DNA of 64,000 bases, from positions 62,001 to 126,000 of the forward strand of contig NW_026860384.1 of NCBI RefSeq assembly GCF_026571515.1, read 5' to 3'. The notes beneath the pieces are model-generated. The model was not told the origin of the DNA. It saw only the letters and a list, made by a program, of their open reading frames with translations, and did no database searches. The stretch is from Ruditapes philippinarum (taxonomy: Eukaryota). How positions within the stretch are numbered: position 1 is the first letter of the stretch; every line of letters starts with the position of its first letter. Below are positions 1,031 to 56,367 of this stretch, piece after piece. The position numbers and the translations under genes are program-made.

Positions 1031-1992
1031 TTATAACGTCTCAAACATTTTGGATAAAATGTTAGCCTTATCAGACCAATTCAGTTCCAAATAAGATTTA
1101 TATGCATCAGATTTCCAATCCCCCAAAAGTTGAATATGCTCTGGAGAAATATTAGAACGATGAGCTAAAGTAGCAAAACCCCTTCTAAACGAATGAGAAG
1201 AAAACATTTCAGGAGGTAAACCAATTAAGGCAATACATTCCCTTAATTTCTTCTGAAATAAATAATATGAAACATATGAACCATTGGAAAGAGAAAATAA
1301 AACATTATTATTATTGCTTAACTTTAAGGCAAGCATATTTTCATATGCAACCACAGGGCATAATCTAACATCCTTGAGTCTTAACAAAGGACTAATAACC
1401 TCTCTTTCTCCATATTGATTCGTTTTCGACCAATTAAAATGAACCAAAATATAATCACCGTAATAAAGTACACTATCTTTACTTAAAGACCGACCTTTGA
1501 CAATATCAGAATAATTTGTGGGAACCAAATTAGATTTACTTGCCACAAGAAAAAAGGCAAATAAAAACAAACACCAATAAACTAAATTATCTGTAACAGA
1601 GAAATCTAAAACCTCATGAATCTGTAGCAATATACCCAAAGTTATGGGTTCGGCCTTCTTAACTAATCTAGGCTTTAATCTTTGTAAACCCTTGAAAGAC
1701 AAATTTAATAAATACATGTTAATATGGTCAATATTATAATCTAAAAACAAATGCAAGGTTTTTACACCACTTATATAATTCTTAACACTCTCGACAGAAA
1801 CAAAAGATCTGCTCAAAAAATGAGCATACAATTGAAGAGTGACAGTACAGGCAGGTAAAAAAACCAATTTGAAATATAAACAAAAAATCATAAAACTTTC
1901 CCACTGAATACGCAGATTCTTATTAGTTCCTTCTGCAAAGGCTGACTTGTTGGAATGTCTAAGATCACGCTTCAAAACCTTAAGCTCTGATT
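1031..1992 (-). pseudogene. Tyrosine recombinase of DIRS/Ngaro element (frame open, first catalytic Arg apparently replaced: ASKSNL)
   Basis: 314-aa ORF with SKTNQ, LCPV, HSFRRG and GDWKSDAYKSY motifs and an N-terminal core-binding region (SVKNYISGVKTLH). Confidence 0.9.
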
Positions 1993-3601: not shown

Positions 3602-4510
3602 AAACAAAAACCAACATTCTACATCATGAAAGCGAAAGCATTTTTAACCCTTTGACAAATATATGCAGACGATCTTAACCCCATTGCTAAAACTGTATCG
3701 AAAAAGATATGATTATTCCACGAAAAACCAACCAAATTATAACTAGAATGACATATACTAATTTGTCTATATGCCCGCCTTAAATCTAGTTAATACATAA
3801 AACAACATTGACCTTAACTTTTGATTAAGGCTACAAAATCGTCAATTTTTGGGAAAACCAATTCAGCTCTACTCCCAAGATAATAATCTTTAGGAATAAA
3901 GTCATTTACCCCTGTACAATTTTTAGGATAACTTAAATCTAAAATCACCCTACGCTCACTAGGATTTGATTTTGGTACAGCATTAAGAGGAGAAATGACC
4001 ATACCTTCATCAAAGGGACAACGAGCAAAAGGTCCAATAATAGCCCCATGTGAAGCTTCTTTCTGTAAATATTTGACCATGTCATCTGGAAACAATACAG
4101 CACCAGTATGATTTTTAACTTTTGCAGTTTTAGAAAACAAAATGCTTTTATCTTCCAAATCAATATCAATCGGAAACCCAAATTTAAATAATTCACAAAC
4201 CTGCATATCATAATAACCATGCAGCATCTTACTCATGAAAACAGTATCAATTTTATGATAACCTTGAATCCGACATCCCTCAAAGTTAAACTTACCAGAA
4301 GCCTTATCTTGCTTGGCAATATCAACCTTATTTAAGGAAGATAAATTCAAGTTATTTTTAAGAGATAAACAGATTTTACAACTTCTATTATGTCTACAAA
4401 AACAACTTGTATCTGATTTAACTGTAACAGAAGAACTGACAATTTTTTTTACATAAATCAGGTAGAAAAACATCAACCAAATTATTTCTTTCAACAACAT
4501 TAATAGACAG

Positions 4511-5822
4511 TCACTGATTTGCATGAGGGCAAGCACTAGAGCATTCTGGATGTGGTAACTCTTTCTTATCCAAGTCCCAGCAAGTAGCGCAGATGTGTTT
4601 ATCAAAACGAGTTTTACCTCCTTTACTAGTGACTACATGAGCAGACTTTAGAGAACATTTATTTCTCTGAAACTTAGAACAAAACAAGACACTTTTATCA
4701 TCAATTGTACCAGTACTAACTTTTTCTTGAGGGAGGCCATACCTGGGATCAGGCTTCAACTTTACCGACTCTGACCTATACTTAAATTTTTGAACAAATC
4801 TGGACAGAACTGTAGCCTCAACATATTGGAAGTCATCTCCCCTTTTGCTATGACCCAACTCAATTTCTCTCAGTACAGCAGCGTATAAAGACTTAATTAC
4901 TAAAAAATCATATGAGCTGTTAATATTCATCAGTTTTTTTTAATTAATTTAAGCGTCCTTGTTTCTCGTGTCTACTTATCTTTGAAGAACAAATTATCTC
5001 TAACTCTCCAGCAATGAATAAGTTAAAATCAAGTTTCTCAAATGAAACGTCCTTACTCACAAAATCAAAGCGCAAATTCGCATGTGGATAACGTTGCTTA
5101 TATTTAACAGAGTCAGAAGATCTAGAAGTAATTCCTGATTTAGTTTTGTGTTTTCTACCTTGAATCTTAACCCTCTCATGACTTAAAGAGGAATCAGAGT
5201 AACTTGAATCAGAGGTAGAACTTGAATCTGTATCAGATGCTTCAGAACTAAACAAACCTAAATTTGCAAATTCCTTCTTGGCAGACATTTTTAAACCAGG
5301 AACTTTCCGCAAAGCATCTATAGTAAGAAACATACCTTCTTTTGAAGTACCTGCACCTTTGGATGATGTCTGTTTAACCGGAGGAGCACTCAATACAGTC
5401 TGTTTACCCTTTTTGTCAACTCGACCCTTCTTCTTACTTTTTGTAGTGGTGCCACTATCCTTCACATGAGCGGAACCTGACACAGATAGTGACTTTTCAA
5501 GGTCGTGAATGTACGCTTCTTTTTCTTCTACTTGCCTCCTCAGCATCTCCAGCTCATTCCGTTCCTGAAAGCGAGCCTGCTGTTCGTCTAAAGGTGACAA
5601 ACGAGCCAACAAATGTTCTTTTTCAGAAACCTTGACATCTCCCGGAAGTACTTTAGACGGTGACGAAGCCACAATCTCCCTAGGAAAAACATACAACTGG
5701 ACGGGAGAAACCGTTATTGCCTCTGAAATCTGTAGTTTCTTAGCAGGCGTTGATATTCTTCCCTAATTCATTGCTTTGTAATCGAGAACTTCTCTATTTC
5801 TCGCTGATTTTCGGTCACTCAT
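4511..5822 (-). pseudogene. gag-like ORF1 of DIRS/Ngaro element
   Basis: ATG at 5822 (MSDRKSARNREVLDYKAMN*) is in frame with ORF 4944..5696 (coiled coil, Ser-rich tract, LFIAGELEII). After a stop and frameshift in an A-run, ORF 4511..4930 carries a Cys/His C-terminus (FCSKFQRNKC...H...HICATC...HPECSSACP). Confidence 0.8.
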
Positions 5823-11608: not shown

Positions 11609-13020
11609 AAATCACAGATTCATTTAATGGTCTATAGTTAACTTGTATCATAATTTGGGGACATTTCTGTTGAAAATTGTCAAAGTTAAATGGTATACAT
11701 AAACATGCACAATGCGTTATCTGGAGTGCAGGTATTAGTTACCCGCACTCCAATGCATACCCATTATTTGGCTTATATTTTCTGTTTACTTACTGTGACG
11801 TCAGAGAAAGGGATAACTATAGAAATATTATATTCAGATGCTCGTTCATTGGTAACTTTTTTCTGGGGTTTCATATTTTTGCCTATTATACAAAAGAGAC
11901 ATCAAAACACCCGACAATGTGATTTATACTCGGGGGCTACGCTCCCTCGTACAAATCAGATAGCCTCGTTTTTCGATGCTCTTTCTATTACTTTAAGTGG
12001 AAAGAAAATTTTATAACAGTATATTATGGTGTATAATAATCGTTTTGTATGACTCGAATTTAAATAAGGTAATGCAATAAATTTTGGTAAATTTGGCACA
12101 CTACTGGCAGACATGTTTCTTAAGACTTTTAATTCAGGGGCGTGAGGGATGTTGCACGTATTCATTATCCCTCATGTACAGACTGAATCAAATCGAGTCT
12201 GCAATTCTCTTGTAATTTTGTTGTGATTAATGATTCCGAGGGATCACTTTGTTTCCAGATTGTTATAATTTTTCTGGTCCTTGGAGATCAGATGTCATTG
12301 ATTTCATTGATTGAAGCACAGGGAAGCTGAAATTCAGATATAACATCATTTATTAGAACTCAGCTTTTATTGTTTGAATATCTGACTACTATTGTTCTGA
12401 CAAAGTGCTCATTAGCCCATAAGTCTAAAAGCTTAACAAACATATCCGAAATGCTTATCTTTTCTCTTCTTTCTTATTCTCCTTATAACACTATGGGACA
12501 GTCATATATAAAAAAATAAGAAAAAAAAATGTATGATATAGTTTATTGCATTTATATATTAACGACATAATGTCTAAATAGAATCACATTTGTGTAAGTA
12601 TGTCATTACATTTGAAAAATATTAATATCACATTAAATTTCCCGCCTGACCGATGAATACTTACAAATTTAGGGTCTGCAACTTTCATAGTGACAGGGTT
12701 AATTTATAACTTCTCGTTAGCTTTTTCAGTAAGCCTGACAACAACAATTATATCTTTAAGTAACGGATTTTTAAATTGGTAAGCTTTCGAAAGCGGGACA
12801 ATTTTCAAACTTATCAGGCGAATAGCGTATGATTAGTGAATGAATTCGAATTTAACAGTATAATTCAGTCTATGAATTGTACATTAAATGAATGTAAGTA
12901 AGACATTTTGCAATTGAGCAGTGTAACCTTTTGAAAAAAAATGTATTACATTTAAAATAAGCAAATGACATATGACGTGAAAGCATTTATCCCAGCATGA
13001 TAATTTTAAAACTTTTACAA

Positions 13021-13447
13021 AACTCTCTTATCCCATCTAGTATCCGTTCTTGAAAACACTCCCTCAGAATACCAAACCATCAGATTCTGTACAACAATTT
13101 AAGCGTCCAGGTTAACCCTCTTATTACTATAACATAGGACCACGAAAATTCCAAATATTGCATACTCGTTTAAGACTTGTCTGTGGTTTCTTAAATGATG
13201 ATCGTTTCTGGGGGAAAAAACCTTTCCGAATCAAACATATGCGCTTGTTGACCAACAGAGACAGTGTTATCCTTTGTATCAGCATGAACGAGATATCCTC
13301 TATAGGAACATAATACAGCTGGATAGATCCCTGATCATAACTCACACTCTGCTTTTACATGGTTCTTATTGTCTTTCAAATAACCAAAACGAAGAGCCTT
13401 TCAAGATTGTTTACTTTTATATTGATTCTACGTAAAGATTTATTTAA
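13021..13447 (+). mobile_element. CR1-type LINE ORF2 C-terminal remnant
   Basis: Broken translation IPSSIR...NTLPQ...VQQFKR...IGPRKFQILHTRLRLVCGFLNDD...CAC...ET...PLYQHERDILY...LLLHGS...NEEPFKIVYFYIDST*RFI*, the typical CR1 ORF2 end. Confidence 0.75.
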
Positions 13448-13950
13448 TGTCTGACTGGTACTGTTATGCTGCATGTATTCATCTTTGTTTTGGGTTTTTT
13501 GTTGTTATTCTTATTTCTTTTTCGTCATCAAAACTTTCTAAAATTGTCCTTAACATTCTTTTTCAATCTTGCATTATCAAATGTGATTTCTTTCTGGTAA
13601 CTTGTTAATTACAACCACCGCCTCTGACATTAAAGACTGTTATTGTTTCAGTCAAAATCTATCATTATTGTATAGTTGGCACTTACATATGTACAAATAT
13701 TTTGAATAAAGATATGTTTAAACCAATATTTAAACTAAATATGTGTAATATCAAAAATAGTTGCGGCTCTGATAGACGTTTAAATATACCATTGTTGTTT
13801 AGTTACCCTAACATCTTAAAAGAAATGCACACCATTTCCAGTAAAATATCAAGCAATCTTTATAGTTATATAATTAATCATGCAATTTTATCTGATCATT
13901 TCACTATAATGTTGTCATTGGTTTAGAAAACATATTCAATTAATAATTAT

Positions 13951-15213
13951 TTATAATAAGACAAGCACCATAAACAAAAGTGTGGAGATTAAAAACAAAG
14001 ATATGAAAACCAAGAATAGAATTTCATCGATATGGTGAACAATAAGCTTCCTACGCTCGGGGAAACCAATTCTTGTGACCGTCTTTGACTTTGTATCAGT
14101 GCTGTTATGTCGCAGGCTTTCGGTTTTTTGTATGTCTTCATGTACCTCAATTGCTTCAACAGATTTAGAGTTAACAGGTTTTCGTCTCTTGCTAAGATTA
14201 TAACACTGGTTATAGAGGGAAACAATGCTAGAGCTTTGTGAATCGTCGTGAATGTGTGTCGCCCTTATTAGTAAAATAGATACTGATGTTATCACCACGG
14301 CAACTGTCAGTTGATAGCTTATATATATTTGAAGATATGAAATATGTTTAGGAACTCTAGGCATGGACTCACTGACCAAATTCAGCAGCACAACAAAGGT
14401 GAGGAGCAAAGACATACTGTAACTTATTCGTTCTCCACTCGCTACTGGTAACTTGAAACACAACACGATCATAAACGACAAAAGGAAAACGGGAACTATA
14501 ATGTTAAGAACATAAAACAACGAGTGACGTTTAAGAGTCAAAGTTATATCAAGAAATGTTACATATCCATAAATCACTCTTTTCTCAATAATTGATTTTT
14601 CCAAAGCCCATTCACCATTTTCCTTATATAAAACTCTTCTAACTTGATCACGTAAAGCATCAATGAGAACTTCAGTGTCCGGAGTTGATTTTGAAATCAT
14701 GATTGTACAATGTTGAACATCAAATGGGTATTTGGTGATGTCAATATTACAAGATGTACGGATATTTCCTCCTGTATACCATAGTGCATCCCCGTTACTT
14801 TCAACTTTAATTTGTAACATGTCCGCGCGATTTTCTGTCAGGACGTATAATGAGTCAATACTATTACTTGCAATAAGATCGGGTATCCATGCAACTACAG
14901 GTGATATATACATTGTTTTAATCTCACTAAATTCTGATTCATTCCAAACCAAAGTTTCATATTTCCAGTTACACGTTAGAGCAATGTTAGACTGTAAGAC
15001 CTGTTCCTTTTCATCTAATCCTTGAATTGCCTGTAAGCTAACGTCGATTCCTACAATAATTGATTTAGACTGATTAATAACTGGTCTAATTGTTTTGTCA
15101 AAGTTTTCCTCTAGATGTCTATAAAGCCTTTTATATTCCCAAAAAGTATTACCCTGGCCTTTTTCTATCATTATATGACAAATTATACAGAATAAAATAT
15201 ATGTCACTTCCAT
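13951..15213 (-). CDS. Intronless Cys-loop ligand-gated ion channel subunit, nAChR-like non-alpha (copy 1), 420 aa
   Basis: Signal peptide, IRPV, WIPD, Cys-loop CNIDITKYPFDVQHC (C-x13-C), NGEW, LKR before M1, M2 GERISYSMSLLLTFVVLL, four hydrophobic helices. No vicinal Cys in loop C. Uninterrupted ATG-to-stop ORF. Confidence 0.97.
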   Translation of the reverse strand: MEVTYILFCIICHIMIEKGQGNTFWEYKRLYRHLEENFDKTIRPVINQSKSIIVGIDVSLQAIQGLDEKEQVLQSNIALTCNWKYETLVWNESEFSEIKTMYISPVVAWIPDLIASNSIDSLYVLTENRADMLQIKVESNGDALWYTGGNIRTSCNIDITKYPFDVQHCTIMISKSTPDTEVLIDALRDQVRRVLYKENGEWALEKSIIEKRVIYGYVTFLDITLTLKRHSLFYVLNIIVPVFLLSFMIVLCFKLPVASGERISYSMSLLLTFVVLLNLVSESMPRVPKHISYLQIYISYQLTVAVVITSVSILLIRATHIHDDSQSSSIVSLYNQCYNLSKRRKPVNSKSVEAIEVHEDIQKTESLRHNSTDTKSKTVTRIGFPERRKLIVHHIDEILFLVFISLFLISTLLFMVLVLL

Positions 15214-15680
15214 GTTTTCACCAAACGTAAGAAGCAGTTATAAATATCTACTTCTATCAAGCATATAACCGATTTCCTTAATATTTACTTTCATACTGAC
15301 ATTATTGTATAATGTAAATGGATATTCTACGCCACTCTTTCAAAGAATCCACCGTTCGCGATAACACTTTGATTTTCTGTTTTTCAATGTTCAAACGTTA
15401 CTGATATTTTCAATTAGCAGAATGTTATCGATTAACATGATAACGTGAAATAGCTTTTATTGTGATATCCGTACATTTGTAAAGAGTTCCCGCTGTGTAT
15501 TTGATATCATCATCGACAATATAATAAGTTAACGCTTTTTAAAAGCTTTTAATTATACTTTAATCATAAATGATTCTTTACTTCTGTCATCAATATTGAT
15601 TGTATGGTGTAATTTTTATAAACAAGTCATTATATGAAAGCATATATGTACATGTATAACCTTTCATTTTTTAAAGTATG
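15214..15680 (-). promoter_or_regulatory. Conserved 5' flank of the channel genes (putative promoter/5' UTR)
   Basis: Alignable in all three intact copies (also 27400-27750 and 56368-56820), with tatttataa ~27 nt upstream of the ATG. The conservation could simply reflect recent duplication. Confidence 0.3.
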
Positions 15681-16021
15681 TTAGTGAAATGTTAATTAAT
15701 TTAGAAATAATAATTATCATATTAATTGACATTTTTCATTTTCTTAACTTGCCAGAGCAATAAAGGTATATATGGCAGATGACAGACTTGATTTCCATTA
15801 AAGAAAACGATGTTAAACAAAAGTAATTGGGTATGGTCAATGATGGCGTACAAAAGTTGTGATTTAATGTATAATGGCGTATTTTGTGGCGCATTGCGGA
15901 CATGGTTTACATCATTGCATTCCTTTGACTTTTATGTACACATGTACTCATTAAAGATATCAGACTTGAAATATAAATAACCATGCTTTAAAAGTCATCT
16001 TAATCATTTAACTTAAATTCT

Positions 16022-16085
16022 TCACACACACGCACGCGCGCACGCTCTCACACACTTACATACACACACGCGCGAGCGCGCAATA
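16022..16085. repeat. Compound (CA)n/(CG)n microsatellite in duplicated flank module
   Basis: Directly visible; paralogous tracts at ~28270-28360, ~43869-43979 (inverted) and ~58657-58746. Confidence 0.9.
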
Positions 16086-19000
16086 CTTCTTCATATTTCA
16101 TATATCTTTATCTAACCTTACAAGAGGTCACAGCTGTACTTCTGGGGTATTAACACACAGAATCAAAGAATAAAATATCTTAAGAGAATGGAAAGTTGTC
16201 TTTAAATCAGGTATCCGTCAGTGTAACATCGTAATATATCTTCAATAATTATTTTCTTAAGACACAAGTCTCTAACGGATTGAACTGGAAGCTATATTTT
16301 TCCACTGCTTTTGTGACGAATGCTCCACTGCTGTAGCGTTTGACTCATCGACTCTACAAAAGCTATGGCCAGTATGATCATTGGCTAAAATAAGCTGACA
16401 TTGACCTTTATGTCATCGATATTTCTGGTAAAAAAATCGTTTGAACTTTTCTAAAATCAACAATAACGGGTTACAATAGTACTTGGATAAACTCATATTG
16501 TCATGTATAGTTTCAACATTAAATGCCCTTGATAGTATTTATTTTTACTAAATTTGCCAGACTTTTGTAATTTATAGACTTACATGATTCGTATTTGAAC
16601 TAACTATACCTAGGATTAAATTTCAAGTGGAGGAAGTTTTCAGGTTCGATAATGACCTTTGAAGGACCTTGACCTTTAGAGTAAAGTCATTAAATTTTCA
16701 TAAAATTGGTCAAATCTGAATTATTAATGGATGGATTTGATTTACTTACGTAGCCGAAAATAAGGTTATCTGTACACTTCTATGAATAAAAGCTTGTGTA
16801 GCGTATAACGAAAACATGTACCAAAAATAATTCGTACTTGCTTGAATTCATTTAAATTTTAATGTTTATATTGTTTTTGATGATGAATGCCAAATAACAA
16901 AATTCAGTTTTAAATAGTATGTAGATAACGTTTTGCCGATATATTTAGAACTGAAATACTGAAAGACGTTCGGAAGAGAAGGAATACAGGGAAGGGCCCA
17001 CGATAATGTTGTAAGAACTTTTGGCTCAACCCTTTTGTATGTACACTTCATTAAATCAAATTCCGTGATCATATTTCAGTTCAGGGAAAGTGTGGGCATT
17101 TTGCTGATTTGTTTCTTTCTTGCGGGGCGGGAGTATTGTGACATACTATATCTCAGAGATTACAGACCCCATAAAGTAATGCTATACTTTACATAACTCT
17201 TTCTTTCTTTATCTATATAACTGTCCGTTGGCCTTTAAATAATATAATATCCACGATGACGTAAGCGAGCACTATTACGTTTTTGTCAAAACGCTTAAAT
17301 TTAGCGGCTTTAACCGCTAGGAATATTTTACAGTATCTGGAAAAAAGTGATCCCTCGGAAGCATTAAAAACAGCAAAATTACATGATAATTGCAGACTCG
17401 GTTTGATTAAATCTATACATGAGGGATAATAAAAAATTGCAACGTCCATCACGCCCCGTAGCACCGGCGTGAGTTGTACTCAATTCTCAACACTAAAAGT
17501 GCTGAAGTCAATACATTTTGTTATTTAAACTATGATACAAAACATATCATAAAGTACTTCCGACATCATAGCATAAATGTGACCTCACAGTCAACCCCGA
17601 ACTTACATTTAAGACCTAAGCATTCGGTATTGGTCTGTTAAATGTTTGCGTGCTGACTGATCGTTTACGATAATTTTACATCATTTCATCAATTATAACA
17701 ACAACGAAATCATAATAATCAATTTAATGTAAATTCTGACAATCACAAAAGATGACAGTACAAATAGATATCATGTTATTTTACTCTTTCACATCGAATA
17801 AAATAGAAAACCCTTTAATACAATAGAATTTGAAAATAAAGGGATGTTAAATTTATTTTTAATAATGTATTCTCAACGGATTATATCAAACAGCAGCATT
17901 TAATTATTTACACAATGAAAATGAAAAATGATCAATGGCTTAAGTTGTGTCGGGGGATGCGTTATGTGAACGTCGCATTGCCTTATTGATATTTGTTCAC
18001 ATTTTTAATGTACTCTAGAATAAATAGAAAATGAAATATGAAACATGGAATTGAATATTTGAAAAGCAAAAGCAAAGAAATATTCACTTAAGGATGTTAT
18101 CGAACGGAGCAAAAAGGCAATCCATGGAGAACTTTAATAAGAACATTATGAGCGAAGAAACAATATAAGTATCTCAGGAATTAATATTGTATAATAAAAA
18201 TAAACAGCAATAAATTTGTGTTTCAAGGTTACATACATACATTTATATTGACCTTTAATACATATTTCCAGGAAAAGCGCCCGATAAAAGTGGACTATAT
18301 TTCACGATTTACAATAAACAAAATTTTCAAACCTTATTTCACGAATAACAAGAGACAAAAAAATCAAACCCTATAAGCGTTGAGTTAGGCTGAAATCTTT
18401 GCGGACGAGAATTTATTAATACTTGTTCATGGAAGGTACTGGAATGTGCAAATTACCGGCCACGCCCTCTAGCACTGGCTTTAGTAGTATTCAACATTTA
18501 AATATGAAAGTGGTGAAAATTTGTATTTCAAAACATCCGCAGATGAAAGTTTGATCCGAAGGGAAGGACGGTCATCTAACAAGTTTGGCTTATGGCTTTC
18601 TTTGAACTTTATGTTGTATTTTTTTAACATAATCCAGTCACAGTTTCCACTAAAAATGGTGGCATAAAGGTACATGCAGTTATTGTATGCTTTTTATACA
18701 AGATGTGTAGAAAGTACAGAAATAGAAACAGGTTTTTTTATTTTATCTAACTTCTAAGCAACCCATTTATGTCTGCCAATCTAAAATCATCGATTTACGA
18801 GTCGTACTCCGATTTTGGTAGGTCACTAAATTGAATAATTTCATTCATCTGTATGAAAGAAATTGTGCTCTTTATCACTACATTGTTTGTATTGACATGA
18901 TAGAGATAGCTGTATACAATCATCAAAAGAATGTCAAACAAGGGTCAACCGAAGCATGATTTTTTTCGCAATTCGAAATTGATAGTTTTAAATGCTAGAT

Positions 19001-26136: not shown

Positions 26137-27399
26137 TTATAATAAGACAAGCATCATGAACAAAAGTGTGGAGATTAAAAACAAAGATATGAAAACCAAG
26201 AATAGAATATCATCGATATGGTGAACAATAAGCTTCCTACGCTCGGGGGAACCAATTCCTGTTAACGTCTTTGACTTTGTTTCAGTGTTGTTATGTTGCG
26301 GGCTTTCGGTTTTTCGTATGTCTTCATTTTCTTCTATTGCTTCAACAGGTCTAGAGGTAACAAGTTTTCGTCTCTTACTAAGATTATAACAGTGGTTATA
26401 GAGGGAAACAATGGTAGAGCTTTGTGGATCGTCATTTATGTGTATCGCCCTTACTAATAAAATAGATACGGATGTTATCACCACGGCAATTGTCAGTTGA
26501 TAGCTTATATAAATTTGAAGATATGAAATATGTTTAGGAACTCTTGGCATGGACTCACTGAACAAATTCAGCAGCACAACAAAGGTGAGGAGCAAAGACA
26601 TACTGTAACTTATTCGTTCTCCACTCCCTACTGGTAACTTGAAACACAACACGATCATAAACGACAACAGGAAAACGGGAACTATAATGTTAAGAACATA
26701 AAACAACGAGTGACGTTTAAGAGTCAAAGTTATATCAAGAAATGTTATATATATATGAATCACTCTTTTCTCAATAATTGATTTTTCCAAAGCCCATTCA
26801 CCATTTTCCTTATATAAAACTCTTATAACTTGATCACGTAAAGCATCAATGAGAACTTCAGTGTCCGGAGTAGTTTTTGAAATCACGATTGTACAATGTT
26901 GAACGTCAAATGGGTATTTGGTGATGTCAATATCACAAGATGTACGGATATTTCCTCCTGTATACCATAGTGCATCACCGTTACTTTCAACTTTAATATG
27001 TGACATGTCCGCGCGATTTTCTGTCAGGACGTATAATGAGTCAATACTATTACCTGCAATAACATCGGGTATCCATGCATCTACAGGTGATATATACATT
27101 GTTTTAATATCACTAAATTCTGATTCATTCCAAACCAAAGTTTCATATTTCCAGTTACACGTTAGAACAATGGTAGACAGTAACACCTGTTCCTTTTCAT
27201 CTAATTCTTGAATTGCCTGTAAGTTAACATCGATCCCTACAATAACTGACTTAGACTGATTAATAACTGGTCTAATGGTTTTGTCAAAGTTTTCCTCTAG
27301 ATGTCCATAAAGTCTTTTATATTCCCAAAATGTATTACCCTGGCCATTTTCTATCATTATATGACAAACTACACAGAAGAAAATATATCCAACTTCCAT
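26137..27399 (-). CDS. Intronless nAChR-like Cys-loop channel subunit (copy 2), 420 aa
   Basis: About 88% identical to copy 1 by hand count (~50 differences). Cys-loop CDIDITKYPFDVQHC, M2 GERISYSMSLLLTF, intact ORF. Confidence 0.97.
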   Translation of the reverse strand: MEVGYIFFCVVCHIMIENGQGNTFWEYKRLYGHLEENFDKTIRPVINQSKSVIVGIDVNLQAIQELDEKEQVLLSTIVLTCNWKYETLVWNESEFSDIKTMYISPVDAWIPDVIAGNSIDSLYVLTENRADMSHIKVESNGDALWYTGGNIRTSCDIDITKYPFDVQHCTIVISKTTPDTEVLIDALRDQVIRVLYKENGEWALEKSIIEKRVIHIYITFLDITLTLKRHSLFYVLNIIVPVFLLSFMIVLCFKLPVGSGERISYSMSLLLTFVVLLNLFSESMPRVPKHISYLQIYISYQLTIAVVITSVSILLVRAIHINDDPQSSTIVSLYNHCYNLSKRRKLVTSRPVEAIEENEDIRKTESPQHNNTETKSKTLTGIGSPERRKLIVHHIDDILFLVFISLFLISTLLFMMLVLL

Positions 27400-28397
27400 G
27401 TTTTCACCAAAAGTAAGAAGCAGTTATAAATATTTGCTTTTAAAAAACATATAACATATTTCCTCTCCGTAAAATTTACTTTCCTTCTGACATTATTGTA
27501 TAATGTTAATGGATATTCTACGTCACTTTTTCAAAGGATCCGCTTTTAATTATAACACTTTGATTTTCTGTTTTTCAAGAGTCCCCGCTGTGTATTTAAT
27601 ATTATCATCGACAATATAGCTAGTAAACGCTTTTAAAATGCTTTTAATCATACTTTAAATTTTATATTTTATTTTACTTCTGTCATCATCAGTCATTTTT
27701 ATAAACAAGTCATGAAATTAAAGCATATATGTACATGTATAACCTTTCCGTTTTTGAAGATAATTATTGCTTTTACAATAAAAATCCTTTTCTGGTTTCT
27801 TTGGTGGCAAAGAGGTGACATTTGATATTATCTTATGGCCACAACTTACTGTTTGAAGCCGCGACTTGTTTTAGCCAATGAAAATGGTTGTATTATCTTT
27901 GGCGGAGACATCGACATAAACTAAGTTATATATTAGTGAAATGTTATTTATTTAGAAATAATCATATTAATTGACATTTTTCATATTCTAAACCTGCCAG
28001 AGCAATAAAGGTATATTTGGCAGATAACTGACTTGATTTCCATTAAAGAAAACCATGTTAAACAAAAGTAATTGGGTGTGGTCAATGATGACGTACAAAG
28101 GTTGTGATTTATTATAATGGTGTATTTTGTGCCGCGTGGCGGACATGGTTTTTATCATTGCATTCCTTTGACTTAAATTATGTATACATGTACTCATTTA
28201 AGATATCAGACTTGAAATATAAATAACCATGCTTTAAAAGTCATCTTAATTATTTTTTTTTAATTCTTTACACACACACACACACGCGCGCGCATGCACT
28301 CACGCAAGCACGCATGCACAAACAGGCAATCACGCGCACTCACACACAGACAAACACACATACTTTGAAACAAACGAGCGTTAGATTAAGTAATTAA

Positions 28398-30371
28398 GGC
28401 GACAACGGACACGTTTCGTTGTACTACCATAAATGTCATTTAAACCAACTTATTTTTGAGTAAAAATTGTTATTTATTTAAATTTTGTGCATTAAATATC
28501 TTTGATCTTCATAAAAAATATCATATTTGAAAAATGCCTTTGTAAATTATTGATAAAAATTAAATTCTATAATTTTAAATCGTCATATCAAAGTCATTTT
28601 TTATTTATTTATTTTTTTATCATCAAACTCTTGGAGTATAAACATAATTATTACAATATCTGGGGAACCCGTGTCCCAGGTTTTTTTTATTTTTTCTCAA
28701 AAAATATAACGTTACGTCAATTAATTTATGCGACTTTTTTCACCATACATACGAAAATTAAAGATAATTAAGTCGCTGATTGGGCGAACAAAATTCCCTG
28801 AGACGGTTCCCTCCGTAATTGAATTCCCTTTCATGTGCTTTAAACTGCATGTACATTGCTTGTTTATTAAAAAAAAGTTGTGCTGATTCAAAGTTAGTCC
28901 GACGCGCATCAAACGAAGTGTCATAAATCGGCTGTTCTCTCTCAGACCCCTACGTTTTCCGTTAAATTATTGTATAATTTAATCATCAAGTATGTATGTA
29001 ATATTTCTTACTTTTATGTAAATATTACATACTTAACGATTAACGCAAATAAAAACATTTGTCGTGCTTTGAGGGTACCGATGTGTTCAAAAATGATAGG
29101 GTACCTGTGATATGAAAATTCAAATGAAGAGAGGTAGCCCGTGCCGCTGCAAAACCGAAAGTAGGGTGTTTTAATGAATTTTACATTTATTTTTGACACT
29201 ATACTGCCATTTGTCCGAAGATGATATGTATATGAACATATTAAATATGTATGATGCATATATAATCAAGCCACAGGTTCATTTCAGCCCGAAACAATAT
29301 GTCGAGGTGATGGGCGAGACAAGACATGTCGATTTTTGTAGCTATTGTGAAGTTGCGGTGCATGAAAATCGGGCACATGACAAATCAGCACATAAATAAA
29401 ATATTCTAGTGTTCCGTGGTATACATCTTTTCTATGTGTCATACCTTGTTTCCTTTTTACAATGAAATTTTACTGTATTGTTATCCATCGCTGGTTTGTT
29501 TTTAGCAGAGAATAACCTGTGCATGTTCAAAGAGGGTACCGTTTGAGCAGATTTCGCAAAGAGGGTACCGATATGGATATGCACCGTGTATAAATGCTTG
29601 ACATAATTTAATAGAAATAAAAGGTATTTTTATCGATCAATATGATCTGACGTTCTTGACTTTTATTATTCAAAATTCTATCTATGCAAGACATACATAG
29701 ATTCAGTTTCTTCTTGGACATACAATAAATTGTGTTCGATTTACTAGTGAACAATATATTCAAACCGTTCACTGAAAATATATTTTCTTATCTTTTTCAT
29801 TGATTCATAAAGAATAAATCATCCGAAGACTATCGTAATTTTTTTTTAGAAATTTGTAAGGGACACCTAATCACCTGTCATATATAGGCGTTCACATAAA
29901 AGTTTGACATTGTTAGAAAAAACGAGGTTGCATGCAAAGCAAGCTCTTGAATCCGTAGTTAAGTTCATAAACTCAATATAATGTCTCTCAGATTACGAGA
30001 TAAATACATTTCATACATTATGGATAAAGGCAGCTACATTGTTTTAACCATCCCCATGGGCGTGCGATTTACGGCTATGCTAAATTATTTGTGACATCTT
30101 GGCCGACAATTTCTTAATTTATAAAATGACTACTTAAATGGTAGACGATACAATGTTGAAATATTCACGTTATTGATAATGGACAGGTTACGTGCATAGC
30201 GGATAAAAATGGTATAGGTATCGTTTTAAAACGTTTAAAAACATATTTTCTGGACTAACTGCTTCCAAAATTAAATCACGAAATTCAATGTATTCAGAAA
30301 AAGTTAATAAATCTACTTAGCAAAAAATCTCAGTTTAGGTATTTTTAGTGATAATTGACTCCGTTTTCACC
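28398..30371 (+). mobile_element. Non-autonomous TTAA-flanked (Kolobok-like) DNA transposon, copy A (1974 bp)
   Basis: TTAA at 28394-28397 and 30372-30375; short TIRs ggcgacaacgga / tccgttttcacc. GG termini with TTAA fit Kolobok better than piggyBac. Confidence 0.8.
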
Positions 30372-30375
30372 TTAA

Positions 30376-32351: not shown

Positions 32352-32488
32352 TTAAGTAATTTAATGCTCATTTTATTCCGATTAAACTATAGCATGATTC
32401 TATAGCACCATTCTTGATGCCTTTCATTATGTACCATGTAATGAAAAAACAACGTCATTTGTCCTGGAAAAATGAATATCTTCCTGTA

Positions 32489-38014: not shown

Positions 38015-38965
38015 TATGTAGTTTGTCATAAAATGATGGGAAAGGGCCAGGGTAATACATTTTGGGAATATAAAAAAACTTTATAGACATCTAGAGGTAA
38101 ACTTTGACAAAACAATTAGACCAGTCATTTATCAGTCTTAGTCAATTATTGTAGGAATCGACTTTAGCCTACAGGCAATTCAAGGATTAGATGAAAAGGA
38201 ACAGGTATTACAGTCTACCATTGCTCTAACGTGTTACTGGAAATATGAAACTTAGGTTTGGAATGAATCAGAATTTAGTGAGATTAAAACAATGTATGTA
38301 TCACCTGTTGATGCATGGATACCCGATTTTATAGCGAGAAATAGTATTAACTCTTTTTTTTTTGACAGAAAATCGGGCGGAAATGTTACAAGTAACGGGG
38401 ATGCACTATGGTATACAGGAGGAAATATCCGTACATCCTGTAACATTGAAATCAAGTGACCAAATGGAAGGACTTTTATATAGGGAAAATGGTGATTGGG
38501 TTTTGGAAAATACAATTATTGAGAAAAGAGTAATATATAGATATGTTACATTTCTTGATATAACTTTGACTCTTAAACGTCGCTCGTTGCTTAATGTTCT
38601 TAACATTATAATTCCTGTTTTCCTTTCGTCGTTTATGATCGTGTTGTGTTTCAATATACCAGTAGCGAGTGGGGAACGAATAAGTTACAGTATGTCTTTG
38701 CTCCTCACCTTTGTTGTGCTGCTGAATTTGGTCAGTGAGTCCATGCCTAGAGTTCCTAAATATATATCATATCTTCAAATATATATATAAAACTTTTTAA
38801 TCAATGTTATAACCTTAGAAAAAGAAGGAATCATAATGAGTCTACACCTCTTCAAGAACAGGAAGTAAATGAAAACGAACGACAAAACGATATCCGAAAT
38901 CATGAGCACTCTAATACACAGTCAAAGTCCGACATAAAACCTGGTTTCCCGACACGGCGACCATC
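38015..38965 (+). pseudogene. Inverted nAChR-like pseudogene (fourth cluster member)
   Basis: Homologous from CH..GQGNTFWEYK onward. Start codon region lost, +1 frameshift in an A-run, in-frame TAG stops (~38138, ~38253), deletion of the second half of the Cys-loop and loop B, most of M3 deleted, M4 absent. Confidence 0.93.
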
Positions 38966-41089
38966 TGTAGCTGGTTCCCGACACGGCGACCAGCTTTAGC
39001 TTTTTATTGGTAAGATAATCAAGTTCCTTTATATTTCAACTGGCTTGAATGTTAAAGTGTTGTTTCTCTCTATGAAGAATATATGTTTAAAACTCATTTG
39101 TTTTTGTTTCCTGTAGTCAGTCAATTAATCAATTAATTAATCAATCAAATATTCATCAATTTATCAACTAAAGGATGTGTAACAAATACAAACTATACAA
39201 TTGATGATTTGTTTGACACGCCTTAAGTTTTTTTAAGCTTAATATCAATCTGCAAATACATTAGTGGTTATATGATAACCTTTTAGTTGACTGTAAAGTT
39301 GAAAGATATGTAAATTTTAAGCTCAAATACTTTATGCAATTGTTTTAAAAGTTACAAAGGTCTGAACTCCATAGGATTTAGAACCGTTTTTGCATAAGCT
39401 AATTTGATAAATATAACTTTTCTTTCAATAAAATGGTTAATAATTGTGTAAAACATACAACTTTGGTTTCAAATGTTTTTTTATTAATAATATTACTTAT
39501 TAGTGAATTAATTTTAAAATATTTAAATTAAAACTAAAATTTCATAAAATATTCCTTTTTCTCAAGATAATGTTAAATAACGTTAGGAACCATCTTGCAC
39601 TAACCCCTTCATTATTATCTATAAATACATGCATTTGAATGTTTTACATATAAGATAAAATTGGAGCATTATACCTTTTTTAAGAAATTGTTACAATTGT
39701 AATAGTGTGTGTTTAGTTAAGACTTGTATTTTTGACTAAATTACGCATTGGGGATTTTCTGTGCGCAAATGGCACAAATTTTTCTCAAGTTTGATATTCT
39801 TCAAACTTTGTGGTTGGAGGCATGCCGATTTAAATACAGTTTATTCCAATCAAATGGTATAAAGTTTTTTAATGTAAATCTGGGACTTAAAATTGTTTGA
39901 TTAACATACTTATTGCCTGTTTTGAAAAATCTTTGTTCCAGAAGAAATTGTACTTACCAGAACATTCACCAAAAATTTTTCATCATTGAATTTTATAAGG
40001 AACTTAAATTTTGATACTACTTTTTAATATATAACATTTATTTTAAATTTAGTTAGATAACATATTATAAATTGTTCCCTTGGTAGAGAAAGTATCCCTG
40101 ATGTGCCAAAAAATGTCCATTTTTCCGGCATAAAATCTTTTAAAGCATAAAATTGATTTATAAACATTCATTGTGCTTTTATGCAAATATATCTCCAAAT
40201 ATTTTCGAATGAAACAAATCTCCCACAGCTCGCATGATTCTTTTTAAAGAAGCAAACTTGTTTTATACACAGATCAGGTTTATATCAGAATCAAAATATC
40301 CCTTACTCATCTCAACTCGATTCATATTTTACACAGACCACACTTTCTTAACACGTCCATTTATATATATTGATAATTGAAACATACATTTACATACCAC
40401 AAAGCCATGCCTTAATTGGAACTACAGAATACTACTTCATATCTTAAAATTATACATGATTAGTAAAAAGTTAACTCATATTCAGTTACTTTAGCCAAGA
40501 TAATAAGAATAACTTATAAATCATTGCAAGAAATTTGATATTGGAAAATAAATCATACATGTCTTTGCTTTGCTCAATATAGTTTCTAAAGGAAAACTTA
40601 TTCCCCTTGCAATCAAAGGCATATTAATTTCATGCATAGAAAATTATGGTAAATGAATTTAACCGGAGAGGTTGTATTCAATCATACAACTTCAACGTTA
40701 TCTACCCAAGTTTTAAAGATGATACATGTATGTCTATCAAATGCACGGTTCGACTCAATTTTATGCGTATTATCTATTCTGTCGACCTTTTGTTCTAGAT
40801 TTTGATATTAACCATTAATGTTTTCATTTTATTTACTTTCTGATCAGTTGCCGATAAACTTTTTAATATCTTTATCCGTTGTTGGATATTACTTACGTAC
40901 CTTCCACGTATTGCTTGAACGACGCTTGCATTTGCATAATTATTGTACAAGACTTGAAATTATATAGAAGTGATAACATCTTAGATATTTTACTTCTGTT
41001 TACCTAGTTTCTTCAAATAACATATGTTACACTGGTTTTTCTAGCGAATAGATCACTGTACGATAAAATCTATTTAGTTATAAATGACT

Positions 41090-51513: not shown

Positions 51514-51660
51514 TACGGAATCCTATTATGGACCTCACGCCCTCGCCCCACGCCCTTTTGAAACACCGTTGGAAAACAAAACGCGAGATTCGTTGGTCAC
51601 ATTCAGTTTTTTAAAACAAGGCGCGGGGCGAGGACACGAGGTCCCTAGTAGGATTCCGTA
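51514..51660. mobile_element. 147-bp MITE nested in the foldback element
   Basis: TIRs tacggaatcctattatggacctc / gaggtccctagtaggattccgta, flanked by gacaag on both sides. Confidence 0.85.
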
Positions 51661-52277
51661 GACAAGTACTTGCAGACAACAACACACTTACATGTTGAGA
51701 AGTTCACATGCCTTATCGACATAATAAAACCATGTTAACAGAATTGCACGCTATTGTGAGAAGTTAAGATGGCCTTTTAACACAATAAAATGGTATTTAA
51801 CAATTCAACGAGTCATGTAGACATCATCAGTGAAGTTTTAACAATTTAACAATGCTGTTTCACATATAAACCGAAAATTTGAGAATCTCATATATTCATG
51901 TAACATATTAATACGAAGTCTGGGGAAGTTCACATGTTTATTTAACATAATTAGACATAATGTAAACAATATCATATGAATAGACATATTCAAACTGTAG
52001 TTAAAAAAATCAGCATTGTCGTTTAACATATAAATAGGAAGTATTGAGAAGTTCACATGTTCTTTTAACATGATAAGATGTTATGTTAACAATATAACAT
52101 GGCAAAAGACATGTTCAAACTGTAGTTTGACAAGTCAACAGTGTCGTTTAACATATTAATACGGAGTCTTGCGAAGTTCTAATGTTATTTAAACATAATA
52201 AGATGTTATGTTAACTATATCACATGGCAAAAAGACATGGTCAAACTGTAATTTGACAAGTCAACATTGTCGTTTAA

Positions 52278-55104: not shown

Positions 55105-56367
55105 TTATAGTAAGACAAGAACCATAAACAAAAGCGTGGAGATTACAAACAAAGACACGAAAACAAAGAATAGAAGATTATCGATATGGTGAACAAAAAA
55201 CTTCCTACGCTCGGGGGAACCAGGTCTTGTGACCGTCTTTGACTTTGTATCAGTGTTGCTATGTTTTGGGCTTTCGGTTTTTCGTATGTCTTCATTTACC
55301 TCTATTGCTTCAACAGGTCTAGAGGTAACAAGTTTTCGCCTCTTGCTAAGATTATAGCACTGGCTGTAGACAGAAACAAGGCTAGAGCTTAGTGAATCGT
55401 CGTGAATATGTGTCGCCCTTATTAGTAAAATAGATACGGATGTTATTACCACGGCAACTGTCAGTTGATAGCTTATATATATTTGAAGATAAGATATATG
55501 CTTAGGAACCCGAGGCATGGAGTCACTGACCAAATTCAGCAGCACAACAAAGGTGAGGAGCAAAGAGATACTGTAACTTATTCGTTCCCCACTCGCTACT
55601 GGTATCTTGAAACACAATACGATCATAAATGACAAAAGGAAAACGGGAACTATAATGTTAAGAACATAAAACAACGAGTGACGTTTAAGAGTCAAAGTTA
55701 TATCAAGAAATGTTGTATATCCAAAAATCACTCTTTTCTCAATAATTGATTTTTCCAAAGCCCATTCACCATTTTCCTTATATAAAACTCTTATTACTTG
55801 ATCACGTAAAGCATCAATGTGAACTTCAGTGTCCGGAGTTGTTTTTGAAATCACAATTGTACAATGTTGAACATCAAATGGGTATTTGGTGATGCCAACA
55901 TTACAAGATGTACGGATATTTCCTCCTGTATACCATTGTGCGTCACCGTTACTTTCAACTTTAATTTGTAACATGTCCGCGCGATTTTCTGTCAGGACGT
56001 ATAATGAGTCAATACTATTGCCTGCAATAAGATCGGGTATCCATGCGTCTACAGGTGATATATACATTGTTTTAATCTCACTAAATTCTGATTCATTCCA
56101 AACTAAAGTTTCATATTTCCAGTTACACGTTAGAGCAATTGAAGACTGTAAGACCTGTTCCTTTTCATCTAATCCTTGAATTGCCTGTAAGTTAAAGTCG
56201 ATTCCTACAATAATTGATTTAGACTGATTAATGACTGGTCTAATTGTTTTGTCAAAGTTTTCCTCTAGATGTCTATAAAGTCTTTTATATTCCCAAAATG
56301 TATTACCCTGGCCATTTTCTATCATTAAAAGACAAACTACACAGAATAAGATATATGTCACTTCCAT
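55105..56367 (-). CDS. Intronless nAChR-like Cys-loop channel subunit (copy 3), 420 aa
   Basis: Intact ORF, Cys-loop CNVGITKYPFDVQHC, M2 GERISYSISLLLTF, same length as copies 1 and 2. Confidence 0.97.
   Translation of the reverse strand: MEVTYILFCVVCLLMIENGQGNTFWEYKRLYRHLEENFDKTIRPVINQSKSIIVGIDFNLQAIQGLDEKEQVLQSSIALTCNWKYETLVWNESEFSEIKTMYISPVDAWIPDLIAGNSIDSLYVLTENRADMLQIKVESNGDAQWYTGGNIRTSCNVGITKYPFDVQHCTIVISKTTPDTEVHIDALRDQVIRVLYKENGEWALEKSIIEKRVIFGYTTFLDITLTLKRHSLFYVLNIIVPVFLLSFMIVLCFKIPVASGERISYSISLLLTFVVLLNLVSDSMPRVPKHISYLQIYISYQLTVAVVITSVSILLIRATHIHDDSLSSSLVSVYSQCYNLSKRRKLVTSRPVEAIEVNEDIRKTESPKHSNTDTKSKTVTRPGSPERRKFFVHHIDNLLFFVFVSLFVISTLLFMVLVLL

What the first reader, a model, noticed from the sequence alone, without database searches (positions are those of the whole stretch)
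14520..15060. Paralogue differences cluster on ligand-pocket positions, with a hypervariable loop C tip
Seen, for copies 1/2/3/pseudogene: loop C tip YGYV / HIYI / FGYT / YRYV; loop A LIAS / VIAG / LIAG / FIAR; loop D strand QSNIA / LSTIV / QSSIA / QSTIA; beta1 DVS / DVN / DFN / DFS; loop E LQ vs SH and ALW vs AQW. Long intervening scaffold stretches and M1 are almost invariant. All four combinations at the two beta1 sites suggest recombination, gene conversion or recurrent change. Inference: diversifying selection tuning ligand specificity.
Basis: partly seen in the sequence, partly recalled or inferred. Interest (0 to 1): 0.78.

Follow-up and report, generated by a model that had tools for sequence, protein, structure and literature searches.

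The report
Clam nicotinic-like receptor copies differ at pocket
A tandem cluster of single-exon nicotinic-receptor-like channel genes in a clam differs between copies mainly at residues lining the ligand pocket, but the data do not show that natural selection drove those differences.

Summary
The window carries three intact intronless 420-aa pentameric ligand-gated channel genes and one decayed copy. Three more intact copies and a second pseudogene lie on the same contig. The organism is very likely the Manila clam.

The clustering is real. Of 13 mappable alpha7 ligand-contact positions taken a priori from a published table, 9 vary among the six paralogues. Of the other 197 ectodomain positions, 37 vary (p=2e-4). 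dN/dS is 1.3-1.8 at the contacts and 0.26-0.30 elsewhere (LRT p=7e-5).

Diversifying selection is not shown:
- M1a/M2a, M7/M8 and M8/M8a likelihood-ratio statistics are about 0.
- Contact omega is not significantly above 1 (p=0.07-0.46).
- The loop C tip is the most variable 4-codon window, but only at permutation p=0.11.
- A small simulation shows the test would miss omega of about 2 but usually detect omega of 4 or more.

Recombination is real. One copy is a chimera with a breakpoint near codon 315. There is one significant conversion tract, and synonymous sites conflict pervasively.

The proteins lack the acetylcholine aromatic box, so they are orphan receptors of the published bivalve expansion. 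The scan had already noted similar arrays on other DNA of this genome (s1-803781, s1-792539). Transcription was not shown.

The parts
13951..15213 (-). Copy 1: intact single-exon 420-aa nAChR-like pLGIC gene
   Evidence: ORF. Pfam Neur_chan_LBD E=3.2e-35 and Neur_chan_memb E=6.7e-10. Best solved relative is human alpha7, E=1.8e-42. AF2 model pLDDT 77.9 with four TM helices.
14521..15150 (-). Ectodomain of copy 1 (codons 22-231), the region tested
   Evidence: 46 of 210 codons vary in amino acid among the six paralogues. M0 omega is 0.35.
14560..14571 (-). Loop C tip, codons 215-218 (YGYV in copy 1)
   Evidence: AF2 places the turn at 215-217 between beta9 and beta10. It holds 6 minimal replacements, the top 4-codon window, permutation p=0.106. 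Post hoc omega is 2.35.
14300..14505 (-). Gene-conversion tract shared by copy 1 and L003 (CDS nt 709-914, TM1-TM3)
   Evidence: The pair is identical at 22 consecutive polymorphic sites. Pairwise permutation p=0.001, or 0.015 after multiplying by 15 pairs. Divergence is 0.0% in the window of codons 241-290.
26137..27399 (-). Copy 2: intact 420-aa paralogue (pocket haplotype L74 T76 V78 V113 G116 T176, loop C HIYI)
55105..56367 (-). Copy 3: intact 420-aa paralogue (F58 S76 Q144, loop C FGYT)
38018..39068 (+). Pseudogene: frameshifts, stops, and most of the Cys-loop to loop F segment missing. Its 3' part resembles L006.
   Evidence: tblastn pieces in different frames. Three-frame translation. 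Stops reported (2 TAG, 1 TAA).

Best explanation
The window holds part of a young tandem array: six intact copies and two pseudogenes within about 95 kb of one contig. The genes are retrogene-like and single-exon, and they encode nicotinic-receptor-like, probably cation-selective, pentameric channel subunits. The organism is very likely the Manila clam.

The subunits cannot bind acetylcholine in the canonical way. The loop B Trp is Ser/Thr, the loop A Tyr is Ser/Gly/Ile, the loop D Trp is Ala/Val, and the loop C Cys-Cys pair is deleted.

After duplication, three ectodomain haplotypes arose. They differ chiefly at side chains homologous to ligand contacts of the orthosteric inter-subunit pocket. 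The fold, Cys-loop, pore and three pocket aromatics (Y146, Y217, F220) are held by purifying selection.

Pocket positions change at about the neutral rate or somewhat faster. I read this as divergence of ligand specificity among orphan receptor subunits, driven by relaxed constraint plus at most weak or episodic positive selection. Unequal crossing-over and gene conversion then copy and shuffle the haplotypes.

Shown here: gene structure, loss of the aromatic box, concentration of differences on contact positions, a roughly four- to six-fold omega contrast, and recombination.

Inferred: that the pocket still binds a ligand, and that the differences change specificity.
For: - Family and architecture.
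- Array: one search places intact copies at C8871 42.6, 76.0, 88.1, 117.1, 129.7 and 136.1 kb, and pseudogenes at about 55 and 100 kb.
- Organism. A 92%-identical protein on the same 452,429-bp contig is named Ruditapes philippinarum. The nearest relatives from another species are Mercenaria at 55-56%.
- Lost aromatic box: alignment to alpha7 and to an alpha7-like landmark.
- Clustering: 9 of 13 against 37 of 197, p=2.1e-4. With a gap-free anchor mapping, 10 of 12 against 36 of 198, p=5e-6.
- Synonymous variation is not enriched at contacts: 2 of 13 against 34 of 197 codons.
- Omega at contacts 1.28, 1.79 and 1.63 against 0.26-0.30 elsewhere. Two-omega against one-omega LRT 15.9, p=6.6e-5.
- Scaffold and channel are constrained: omega for TM1-3 is 0.08-0.41.
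- In 13 other recent paralogue groups of the same genome, the contact positions are constrained: 31 of 150 vary against 358 of 2548, omega about 0.42 against 0.28, CMH p=0.031. The pocket therefore matters in the family, and this cluster is the outlier.
- Recombination.
Against: - No codon model needs omega above 1.
- Contact omega is statistically indistinguishable from 1, so pure loss of constraint fits.
- There are only six sequences with a tree length of 0.55 substitutions per codon. Power is 0 of 12 for 6% of sites at omega 2.
- Pocket states fall into three haplotypes, so few independent substitutions underlie the pattern.
- Pervasive recombination violates the single-tree assumption of all my likelihood models.
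- The loop C and loop F equivalences to alpha7 are alignment-dependent; HMMER and MAFFT differ by 2 residues in loop C.
- No pentamer model was built, so 'lines the pocket' rests on homology.
- Transcription was not shown.
- The focal cluster was picked because it looked like this. Only 2 of 14 groups have a per-group Fisher p below 0.05.
Confidence: 0.5

Rival explanations
1. Pure relaxed constraint. In this cluster the orthosteric pocket no longer does anything, for example because the subunits are accessory members of heteromers or are gated elsewhere. Its lining drifts neutrally while fold, assembly and pore remain selected. The differences have no adaptive or pharmacological meaning.
For: - M1a fits as well as M2a, with 62% of codons at omega about 0 and 38% at omega 1. 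M8's extra class sits at 1.02.
- Contact omega of 1.28 has a CI of 0.70-2.10 with branch lengths fixed, and p=0.46 against 1.
- The canonical aromatic box is already gone.
- Two of eight copies in the array are pseudogenes.
- No transcription evidence was found.
Against: - All three point estimates exceed 1 (1.28-1.79), even though 4 of 13 contacts are invariant (K175, Y146, Y217, F220).
- The same positions are constrained in 13 other paralogue groups, omega about 0.42.
- Six copies keep full-length ORFs with TM1-3 omega of 0.08-0.41. That is hard to reconcile with a receptor whose gating site is useless.
Confidence: 0.35
2. Strong diversifying selection on the pocket, as the first reader proposed and as reported for octopus chemotactile receptors: a small class of sites with omega well above 1, centred on a hypervariable loop C tip.
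For: - Loop C tip omega is 2.35, CI 1.05-4.65. Codons 215, 216 and 218 carry six replacements and no synonymous change.
- Three of the ten ectodomain positions with three or more states are a-priori contacts, and 215 and 216 sit at the loop C tip.
- Variable beta2 positions 74, 76, 78 and 80 lie on one face of the strand.
- The anchor-map contact omega is 1.79, p=0.066.
Against: - LRTs are about 0 in every site-model comparison.
- In the simulation, 6% of sites at omega 4 was detected in 8 of 12 runs and at omega 8 in 12 of 12, so a strong class should have shown.
- The loop C window was chosen post hoc, and its clustering has permutation p=0.106.
- Recombination inflates such signals rather than hiding them.
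Confidence: 0.1
3. The variable positions tune subunit-subunit assembly rather than ligand binding, that is, which paralogues can sit next to each other in a pentamer. The binding loops are also the inter-subunit interface.
For: Both principal-face (loops A, B, C) and complementary-face (beta1, loops D, E, F) positions vary. Several co-resident paralogues could form heteromers.
Against: The enrichment was found with a list of ligand contacts, not of general interface residues (list from PMC3066128 Table 2, seen). No interface analysis could be done because no pentamer model was available.
Confidence: 0.05

Closest known systems
Expanded intronless, tandemly arrayed nAChR genes of bivalves (Jiao et al. 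2019, BMC Genomics, PMC6896357; passages read)
   Same: Single-exon genes in tandem arrays. The expansions are lineage-specific. Many members lack conserved principal binding residues. The authors suggest that LBD diversity may broaden ligand specificity. This genome gave more than 100 such matches.
   Different: In that paper the words 'selection' and 'positive selection' occur 0 times in the text. No codon-level or contact-position test is reported in the text I could search; its additional files were not visible to me. It covers oysters, pearl oyster, scallop and mussels, not this venerid cluster.
Cephalopod chemotactile receptors (CRs). Known to me here through the review PMC11526382 (passages and figure legend read) and PMC10338036. 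The primary papers (van Giesen 2020, Allard 2023, Kang 2023) were not read.
   Same: nAChR-derived channels that do not bind acetylcholine, expanded by duplication. Key pocket residues differ between paralogues. [quoted passage not shown]
   Different: No omega above 1 is detectable here. Nothing is known of expression in sensory tissue or of ligands. Orthology to the CR clade was not tested, and CR chains were not among the 60 best solved-structure matches listed.
Alpo4, orphan nAChR-like receptor of Alvinella pompejana (PMC10338036; PDB 8bx5 family is among the hits)
   Same: A lophotrochozoan orphan pLGIC without the loop C Cys-Cys pair and with no known agonist.
   Different: According to the paper, Alpo4 keeps the aromatic cage (F103, W159, Y199, Y205, W65). 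The clam copies have lost the loop A, B and D aromatics.
Human alpha7 nAChR (best solved relative, E=1.8e-42)
   Same: Fold, Cys-loop C-x13-C, four TM helices, and the GE(K/R) motif at the cytoplasmic mouth of M2.
   Different: About 22-24% identity in structural alignments. No vicinal Cys. Loop C is four residues shorter. W149, Y93 and W55 are replaced by small residues.

Membership tests
Cys-loop / pentameric ligand-gated ion channel superfamily | Neurotransmitter-gated channel ligand-binding domain followed by the transmembrane domain | tested here: met
   PF02931 E=3e-35 to 3e-33 and PF02932 E=3e-10 to 8e-9, above the curated cut-offs, in 3 of 3 window copies.
Cys-loop / pentameric ligand-gated ion channel superfamily | Cys-loop: two cysteines 13 residues apart | tested here: met
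   C155 and C169 are invariant in 24 of 24 sequences of alignment A1. The signature was found in 54 ORFs from 59 fetched loci.
Cys-loop / pentameric ligand-gated ion channel superfamily | Four transmembrane helices and the nAChR-type fold | tested here: met
   AF2 helices at 232-254, 260-283, 293-320 and 384-419. Foldseek top hits are all nAChR chains, E about 1e-29, TM 0.66-0.72 normalised by query length and 0.70-0.84 by target length.
Acetylcholine-gated nicotinic receptor (functional sense) | Loop B Trp (alpha7 W149) for the cation-pi contact | tested here: not met
   Ser in 2 and Thr in 4 of the 6 paralogues. The landmark alpha7-like protein has Trp in that column.
Acetylcholine-gated nicotinic receptor (functional sense) | Loop A Tyr (Y93) and loop D Trp (W55) | tested here: not met
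   Position 116 is S/G/G/G/I/S and position 78 is A/V/A/V/A/A.
Acetylcholine-gated nicotinic receptor (functional sense) | Loop C vicinal Cys-Cys (alpha-type) and the two loop C tyrosines | tested here: not met
   The Cys-Cys pair is absent (a 4-residue gap). The tyrosine equivalents are ambiguous: Y217 and F220 by HMMER, 215 and 218 by MAFFT.
Bivalve retrogene-type nAChR expansion (Jiao 2019) | Intronless ORF, tandem array, lineage-specific close paralogues | tested here: met
   Uninterrupted ORFs. Eight copies lie on one contig. Identity within the cluster is 77-91% against at most 48% to the next clade and 55-56% to Mercenaria.
Cephalopod-type chemotactile receptor | Expression in sensory epithelium and gating by external, poorly soluble compounds | not testable with these tools
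   The read check gave no usable RNA evidence. No functional data exist.
Cephalopod-type chemotactile receptor | Pocket sites with omega significantly above 1 | tested here: not met
   M2a-M1a LRT 0.001, M8-M7 LRT 0.02. Contact omega 1.28-1.79, p=0.07-0.46 against 1. Power is low for weak selection.

The most novel reading that the evidence does not exclude
The array is a bivalve counterpart of cephalopod chemotactile receptors: environment- or microbe-sensing orphan channels whose pocket residues are diversified by weak positive selection. Gene conversion and unequal crossing-over shuffle principal-face and complementary-face pocket haplotypes among tandem copies. Heteromeric assembly of six subunits would then present many distinct binding sites.
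Probability: 0.2. Interest if true: 0.6.

Novelty: new member of a known kind. Interest (0 to 1): 0.35.

Why it matters
Bivalves carry one to two hundred nAChR-like genes of unknown function. If recent paralogues diverge specifically at ligand-contact positions, that is the signature expected of receptors acquiring new ligands. This cluster of six near-identical subunits with three pocket haplotypes would be a compact system for testing that idea by pocket swaps.

As it stands, the result is a quantified example inside an already published expansion. It carries a clear caution: concentration of differences on the pocket does not by itself demonstrate diversifying selection.

Tried and rejected
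PHI test for recombination. It was significant for the whole gene (p=0.023) and the 3' part (p=0.017), but not for the ectodomain (p=0.44) or codons 1-325 (p=0.18). Within the ectodomain, recombination therefore rests on four-gamete conflicts: Rmin is 12, and for synonymous sites alone 34 of 66 pairs are incompatible with Rmin 5.

GENECONV-like runs. Only 1 of 15 pairs was significant (copy 1 with L003, in TM1-TM3), and no pair was significant in the ectodomain.

Family-wide alignment. My ORF filter kept only 11 loci, and loop B of the landmark protein was misaligned. I abandoned it in favour of motif-anchored mapping.

Replicate test.
- It used 41 of the 54 ORFs, in 14 groups.
- L023 was left out because its N-terminus is truncated and an anchor was missing.
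- Twelve ORFs without a close paralogue among the fetched loci were left out: L019, L021, L024, L025, L029, L030, L031, L032, L040, L041, L043, L047.
- L009 was added by my choice to the L007/L008 group, although it was below the 72% clustering threshold.
- The loop C contacts could not be anchored in 4 groups.

Expression.
- No holder of the sequence is on record as RNA.
- Run X23 (RNA) laid 0 reads with about 6% of the run read.
- Run X21 is labelled RNA-seq and laid 44 reads. Of these, 37 fit only partly. Two of its three loose ends start with GATC, the third carries GATC at its junction end, and the one at 14470 abuts a genomic GATC. It behaves like a ligation library.
- The contigs of X1 and X2 also cover the non-coding flank.
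- So there is no evidence either way.

Other points.
- Foldseek added only the expected nAChR fold.
- My likelihood code is home-made (GY94, F3x4). Its M0 omega of 0.35 agrees with the Nei-Gojobori range of 0.27-0.54, but it was not validated against PAML.
- Supplementary files of Jiao 2019 (binding-site alignments) were not visible and may bear on the claim that no contact-level analysis is in print.
- That claim rests on searches and on text finds 17 and 53 only.
Full report
WHAT IS THERE

The window is AT-rich (GC about 0.28-0.36) and contains no N. It carries three uninterrupted 420-codon ORFs on the minus strand, at 13951-15213, 26137-27399 and 55105-56367. Each has the Pfam ligand-binding and transmembrane domains of neurotransmitter-gated channels above the curated cut-offs. 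A fourth copy on the plus strand at about 38018-39068 is broken by frameshifts and stops and lacks most of the Cys-loop to loop F segment.

The window is C8871:62001-126000 of a 1.41-Gb assembly. The same contig holds three more intact copies: L003, L005, and L006, which is 549 aa because of a repeat in the M3-M4 loop. It also holds a second pseudogene, L011. The next relatives in the genome are only 46-48% identical, and the genome gave more than 100 single-exon matches to the family.

A protein 92% identical to copy 1, on the same 452,429-bp contig as the window's own protein, is named Ruditapes philippinarum. The nearest relatives from another species are Mercenaria mercenaria proteins at 55-56%.

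The best solved relative is human alpha7 (E=1.8e-42). An AlphaFold2 model (pLDDT 77.9) matches nAChR chains.

CHECK OF THE OBSERVATION

The span 14520-15060 is codons 52-231 of copy 1.

The HMMER alignment to alpha7 gives these equivalences:
- position 78 = W55
- position 80 = Q57
- position 59 = S36
- position 116 = Y93
- position 144 = Q117
- position 146 = L119
- position 172 = K145
- position 175 = S148
- position 176 = W149
- position 195 = G167
- position 217 = Y188
- position 218 = E193
- position 220 = Y195
- the Cys190-Cys191 pair falls in a 4-residue gap

I converted alpha7 numbering as mature = precursor minus 22, which is recalled. At all computed positions the alpha7 letters match the residue names in the published table used below.

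An alpha7-like hemichordate protein in alignment A1 has Tyr, Trp and Trp in the loop A, B and D columns, where the clam copies have S/G/I, S/T and A/V. So the loop names are right, and the canonical aromatic box is lost.

The AF2 model puts the loop C turn at 215-217. In loop C, HMMER and MAFFT differ by two residues, so I report both mappings.

IS THE CLUSTERING MORE THAN CHANCE?

For an a-priori list I used Table 2 of Brams et al. 2011 (PMC3066128; table text seen). It lists 15 alpha7 residues homologous to AChBP ligand contacts, of which 13 can be mapped.

Among the six intact paralogues, 9 of 13 contacts vary in amino acid against 37 of 197 other ectodomain positions (Fisher one-sided p=2.1e-4). 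Three of 13 against 7 of 197 have three or more states (p=0.017). Synonymous variation is not enriched: 2 of 13 against 34 of 197 codons.

With a gap-free, motif-anchored mapping, the figures are 10 of 12 against 36 of 198 (p=5e-6). I chose that mapping after seeing the data, so the conservative figure is the first one.

SELECTION TESTS

Nei-Gojobori pairwise omega:

| Region | Omega |
|---|---|
| Whole gene | 0.24-0.63 |
| Ectodomain | 0.27-0.54 |
| TM1-3 | 0.08-0.41 |
| M3-M4 loop | 0.34-1.5 for most pairs, with one pair at 6.2 on almost no synonymous differences |

The ectodomain is therefore not the fastest part of the protein.

I wrote a GY94/F3x4 likelihood implementation. On the ectodomain with the IQ-TREE topology it gave:
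- M0: omega 0.35.
- M1a: lnL -1414.875, with 62% of codons at omega about 0 and 38% at omega 1.
- M2a: LRT 0.001.
- M8 against M7: LRT 0.02. M8 against M8a: LRT 0.008.
- Other topologies and codons 1-325: LRT at most 0.22.

Fixed-partition models with shared branch lengths gave contact omega against the rest of 1.28 against 0.30 (13 sites), 1.79 against 0.28 (12 anchor-mapped sites) and 1.63 against 0.26 (union of 15). Against omega = 1 these have p=0.46, 0.066 and 0.095.

The contrast with the scaffold is strong. The two-omega against one-omega LRT is 15.9 (p=6.6e-5). Broadly defined loops A-G give 0.53 against 0.24 (p=0.002), though those loop ranges are recalled conventions.

The loop C tip (215-218) has omega 2.35, CI 1.05-4.65, but it was chosen post hoc. 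A scan statistic over all 4-codon windows gives p=0.106.

A small power simulation on the fitted tree, with 12 runs per setting:

| Setting | Runs with M2a LRT above 5.99 |
|---|---|
| 6% of sites at omega 2 | 0 of 12 |
| 6% of sites at omega 4 | 8 of 12 |
| 6% of sites at omega 8 | 12 of 12 |
| Null | 1 of 12 |

Strong diversifying selection is therefore unlikely. Weak selection cannot be excluded.

REPLICATION ELSEWHERE IN THE GENOME

From 59 fetched loci I obtained 54 ORFs with a Cys-loop signature and formed 13 further groups of recent paralogues (the rows dropped are listed under Tried and rejected).

Pooled over those groups, 31 of 150 contact positions vary against 358 of 2548 others (CMH p=0.031). 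Crude omega is about 0.42 against 0.28. Only one replicate group (L033) has a per-group p below 0.05.

Pocket positions are thus somewhat faster everywhere but normally constrained. The focal cluster is the outlier. Its p-value survives correction for the 14 groups examined. It was, however, brought to me because it looked this way.

None of the 54 ORFs has the full aromatic box.

RECOMBINATION

- L006 is a chimera. It differs from the other five copies by 4.5-7.0% 5' of codon about 315 and by 36-38% 3' of it (max chi-square 164-235, permutation p at most 0.002). Correspondingly, dS is 0.08-0.17 in the ectodomain and 0.13-0.27 in TM1-3, against 0.87-1.0 in the M3-M4 loop and TM4.
- The window's pseudogene carries the L006-type 3' part.
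- Copy 1 and L003, which lie 33 kb apart, share a 206-nt tract (codons 237-305) with no differences across 22 polymorphic sites (p=0.001, or 0.015 after correcting for 15 pairs).
- Informative sites give strongly conflicting bipartitions. Rmin is 29 for the gene and 12 for the ectodomain.
- Using synonymous informative sites only, 34 of 66 pairs in the ectodomain are incompatible (Rmin 5). The conflict is therefore not just convergent replacement.
- PHI is significant for the whole gene (p=0.023) but not for the ectodomain (p=0.44).
- Pocket states travel as three haplotypes with linked synonymous markers: copy 1 with L006, copy 2 with L003 (and pseudogene L011), and copy 3 with L005.
- At codon 216 the states GGA, AGA and ATA form a stepwise path.

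EXPRESSION

No run holding the sequence is on record as RNA. When reads were laid on 12500-16500:
- One RNA run gave 0 reads.
- One run labelled RNA-seq gave 44 reads. Of these, 37 fit only partly, and their loose ends carry GATC at the junction (two of the three start with it), one next to a genomic GATC site.
- Two runs of guessed kind gave contigs that also cover the non-coding flank.

I draw no conclusion on transcription.

INTERPRETATION

Shown:
- a young, recombining tandem array of orphan nAChR-like subunits;
- loss of the acetylcholine box;
- replacement differences concentrated on contact-homologous positions, at about the neutral rate or slightly above;
- a constrained scaffold and channel.

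Inferred:
- that the pocket still binds something;
- that the differences alter specificity.

I give 0.5 to ligand-specificity divergence with at most weak positive selection, 0.35 to pure relaxation, 0.1 to strong diversifying selection and 0.05 to assembly tuning.

COMPARISON WITH WHAT IS KNOWN

The gene class is the published bivalve expansion of intronless, tandem nAChR genes (Jiao et al. 2019, PMC6896357; passages read). That paper notes non-conserved binding sites and speculates on diverse ligands, but its searchable text contains no selection analysis.

The closest functional analogy is the cephalopod chemotactile receptors. A review legend states that their pocket sites are under strong diversifying selection (PMC11526382). 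I did not read the primary papers.

Alpo4 (PMC10338036) is another lophotrochozoan orphan receptor, but it keeps its aromatic cage.

Two earlier notes of this scan describe similar arrays on other pieces of this genome and reached the same classification.

VERDICT

The selection claim is not established. This is a new member of a known kind, of modest interest.

Noticed in passing
L006 (G000:C8871:134636-138805), outside the window; remnant in window pseudogene about 38800-39000: The M3-M4 loop of L006 holds about 15 tandem copies of a 10-residue unit (consensus GSPTRRPSVA), making the protein 549 aa. The window's pseudogene carries one such unit. The unit looks like a serine-rich, basic phosphorylation-type motif, but that is my impression and was not tested.
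   Followed up: partly
window 1031-1975, 3814-4605, 4944-5696 (minus strand) and 59326-60435 (plus strand): These are long ORFs that look like mobile-element genes by eye (recombinase or integrase-like, polymerase-like, and a serine-rich gag-like protein). The 4944-5696 ORF has a clear relative next to another receptor gene on a different contig (second ORF of L009). No family search was run on them.
   Followed up: no
window 12500-16500, run X21: A public run labelled transcriptomic RNA-seq gave reads that fit only partly (37 of 44). Their unmatched parts carry GATC at the junction, next to a genomic GATC site at 14467-14470. This is the behaviour of a proximity-ligation or restriction-based DNA library, so the label may be wrong.
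   Followed up: partly
window 28394-32355 and 50401-53624: Earlier first-reader notes on this window describe a 4-kb palindrome of two inverted TTAA transposon copies and a foldback-like transposon with satellite arms, lying between the receptor genes. I did not examine them.
   Followed up: no
L033/L035/L037/L039 (G000:C4135, about 209-255 kb): This is the only other paralogue group with contact positions significantly enriched for variation (5 of 10 against 34 of 197, p=0.023). It includes a Trp/Arg difference at the loop B Trp position.
   Followed up: partly
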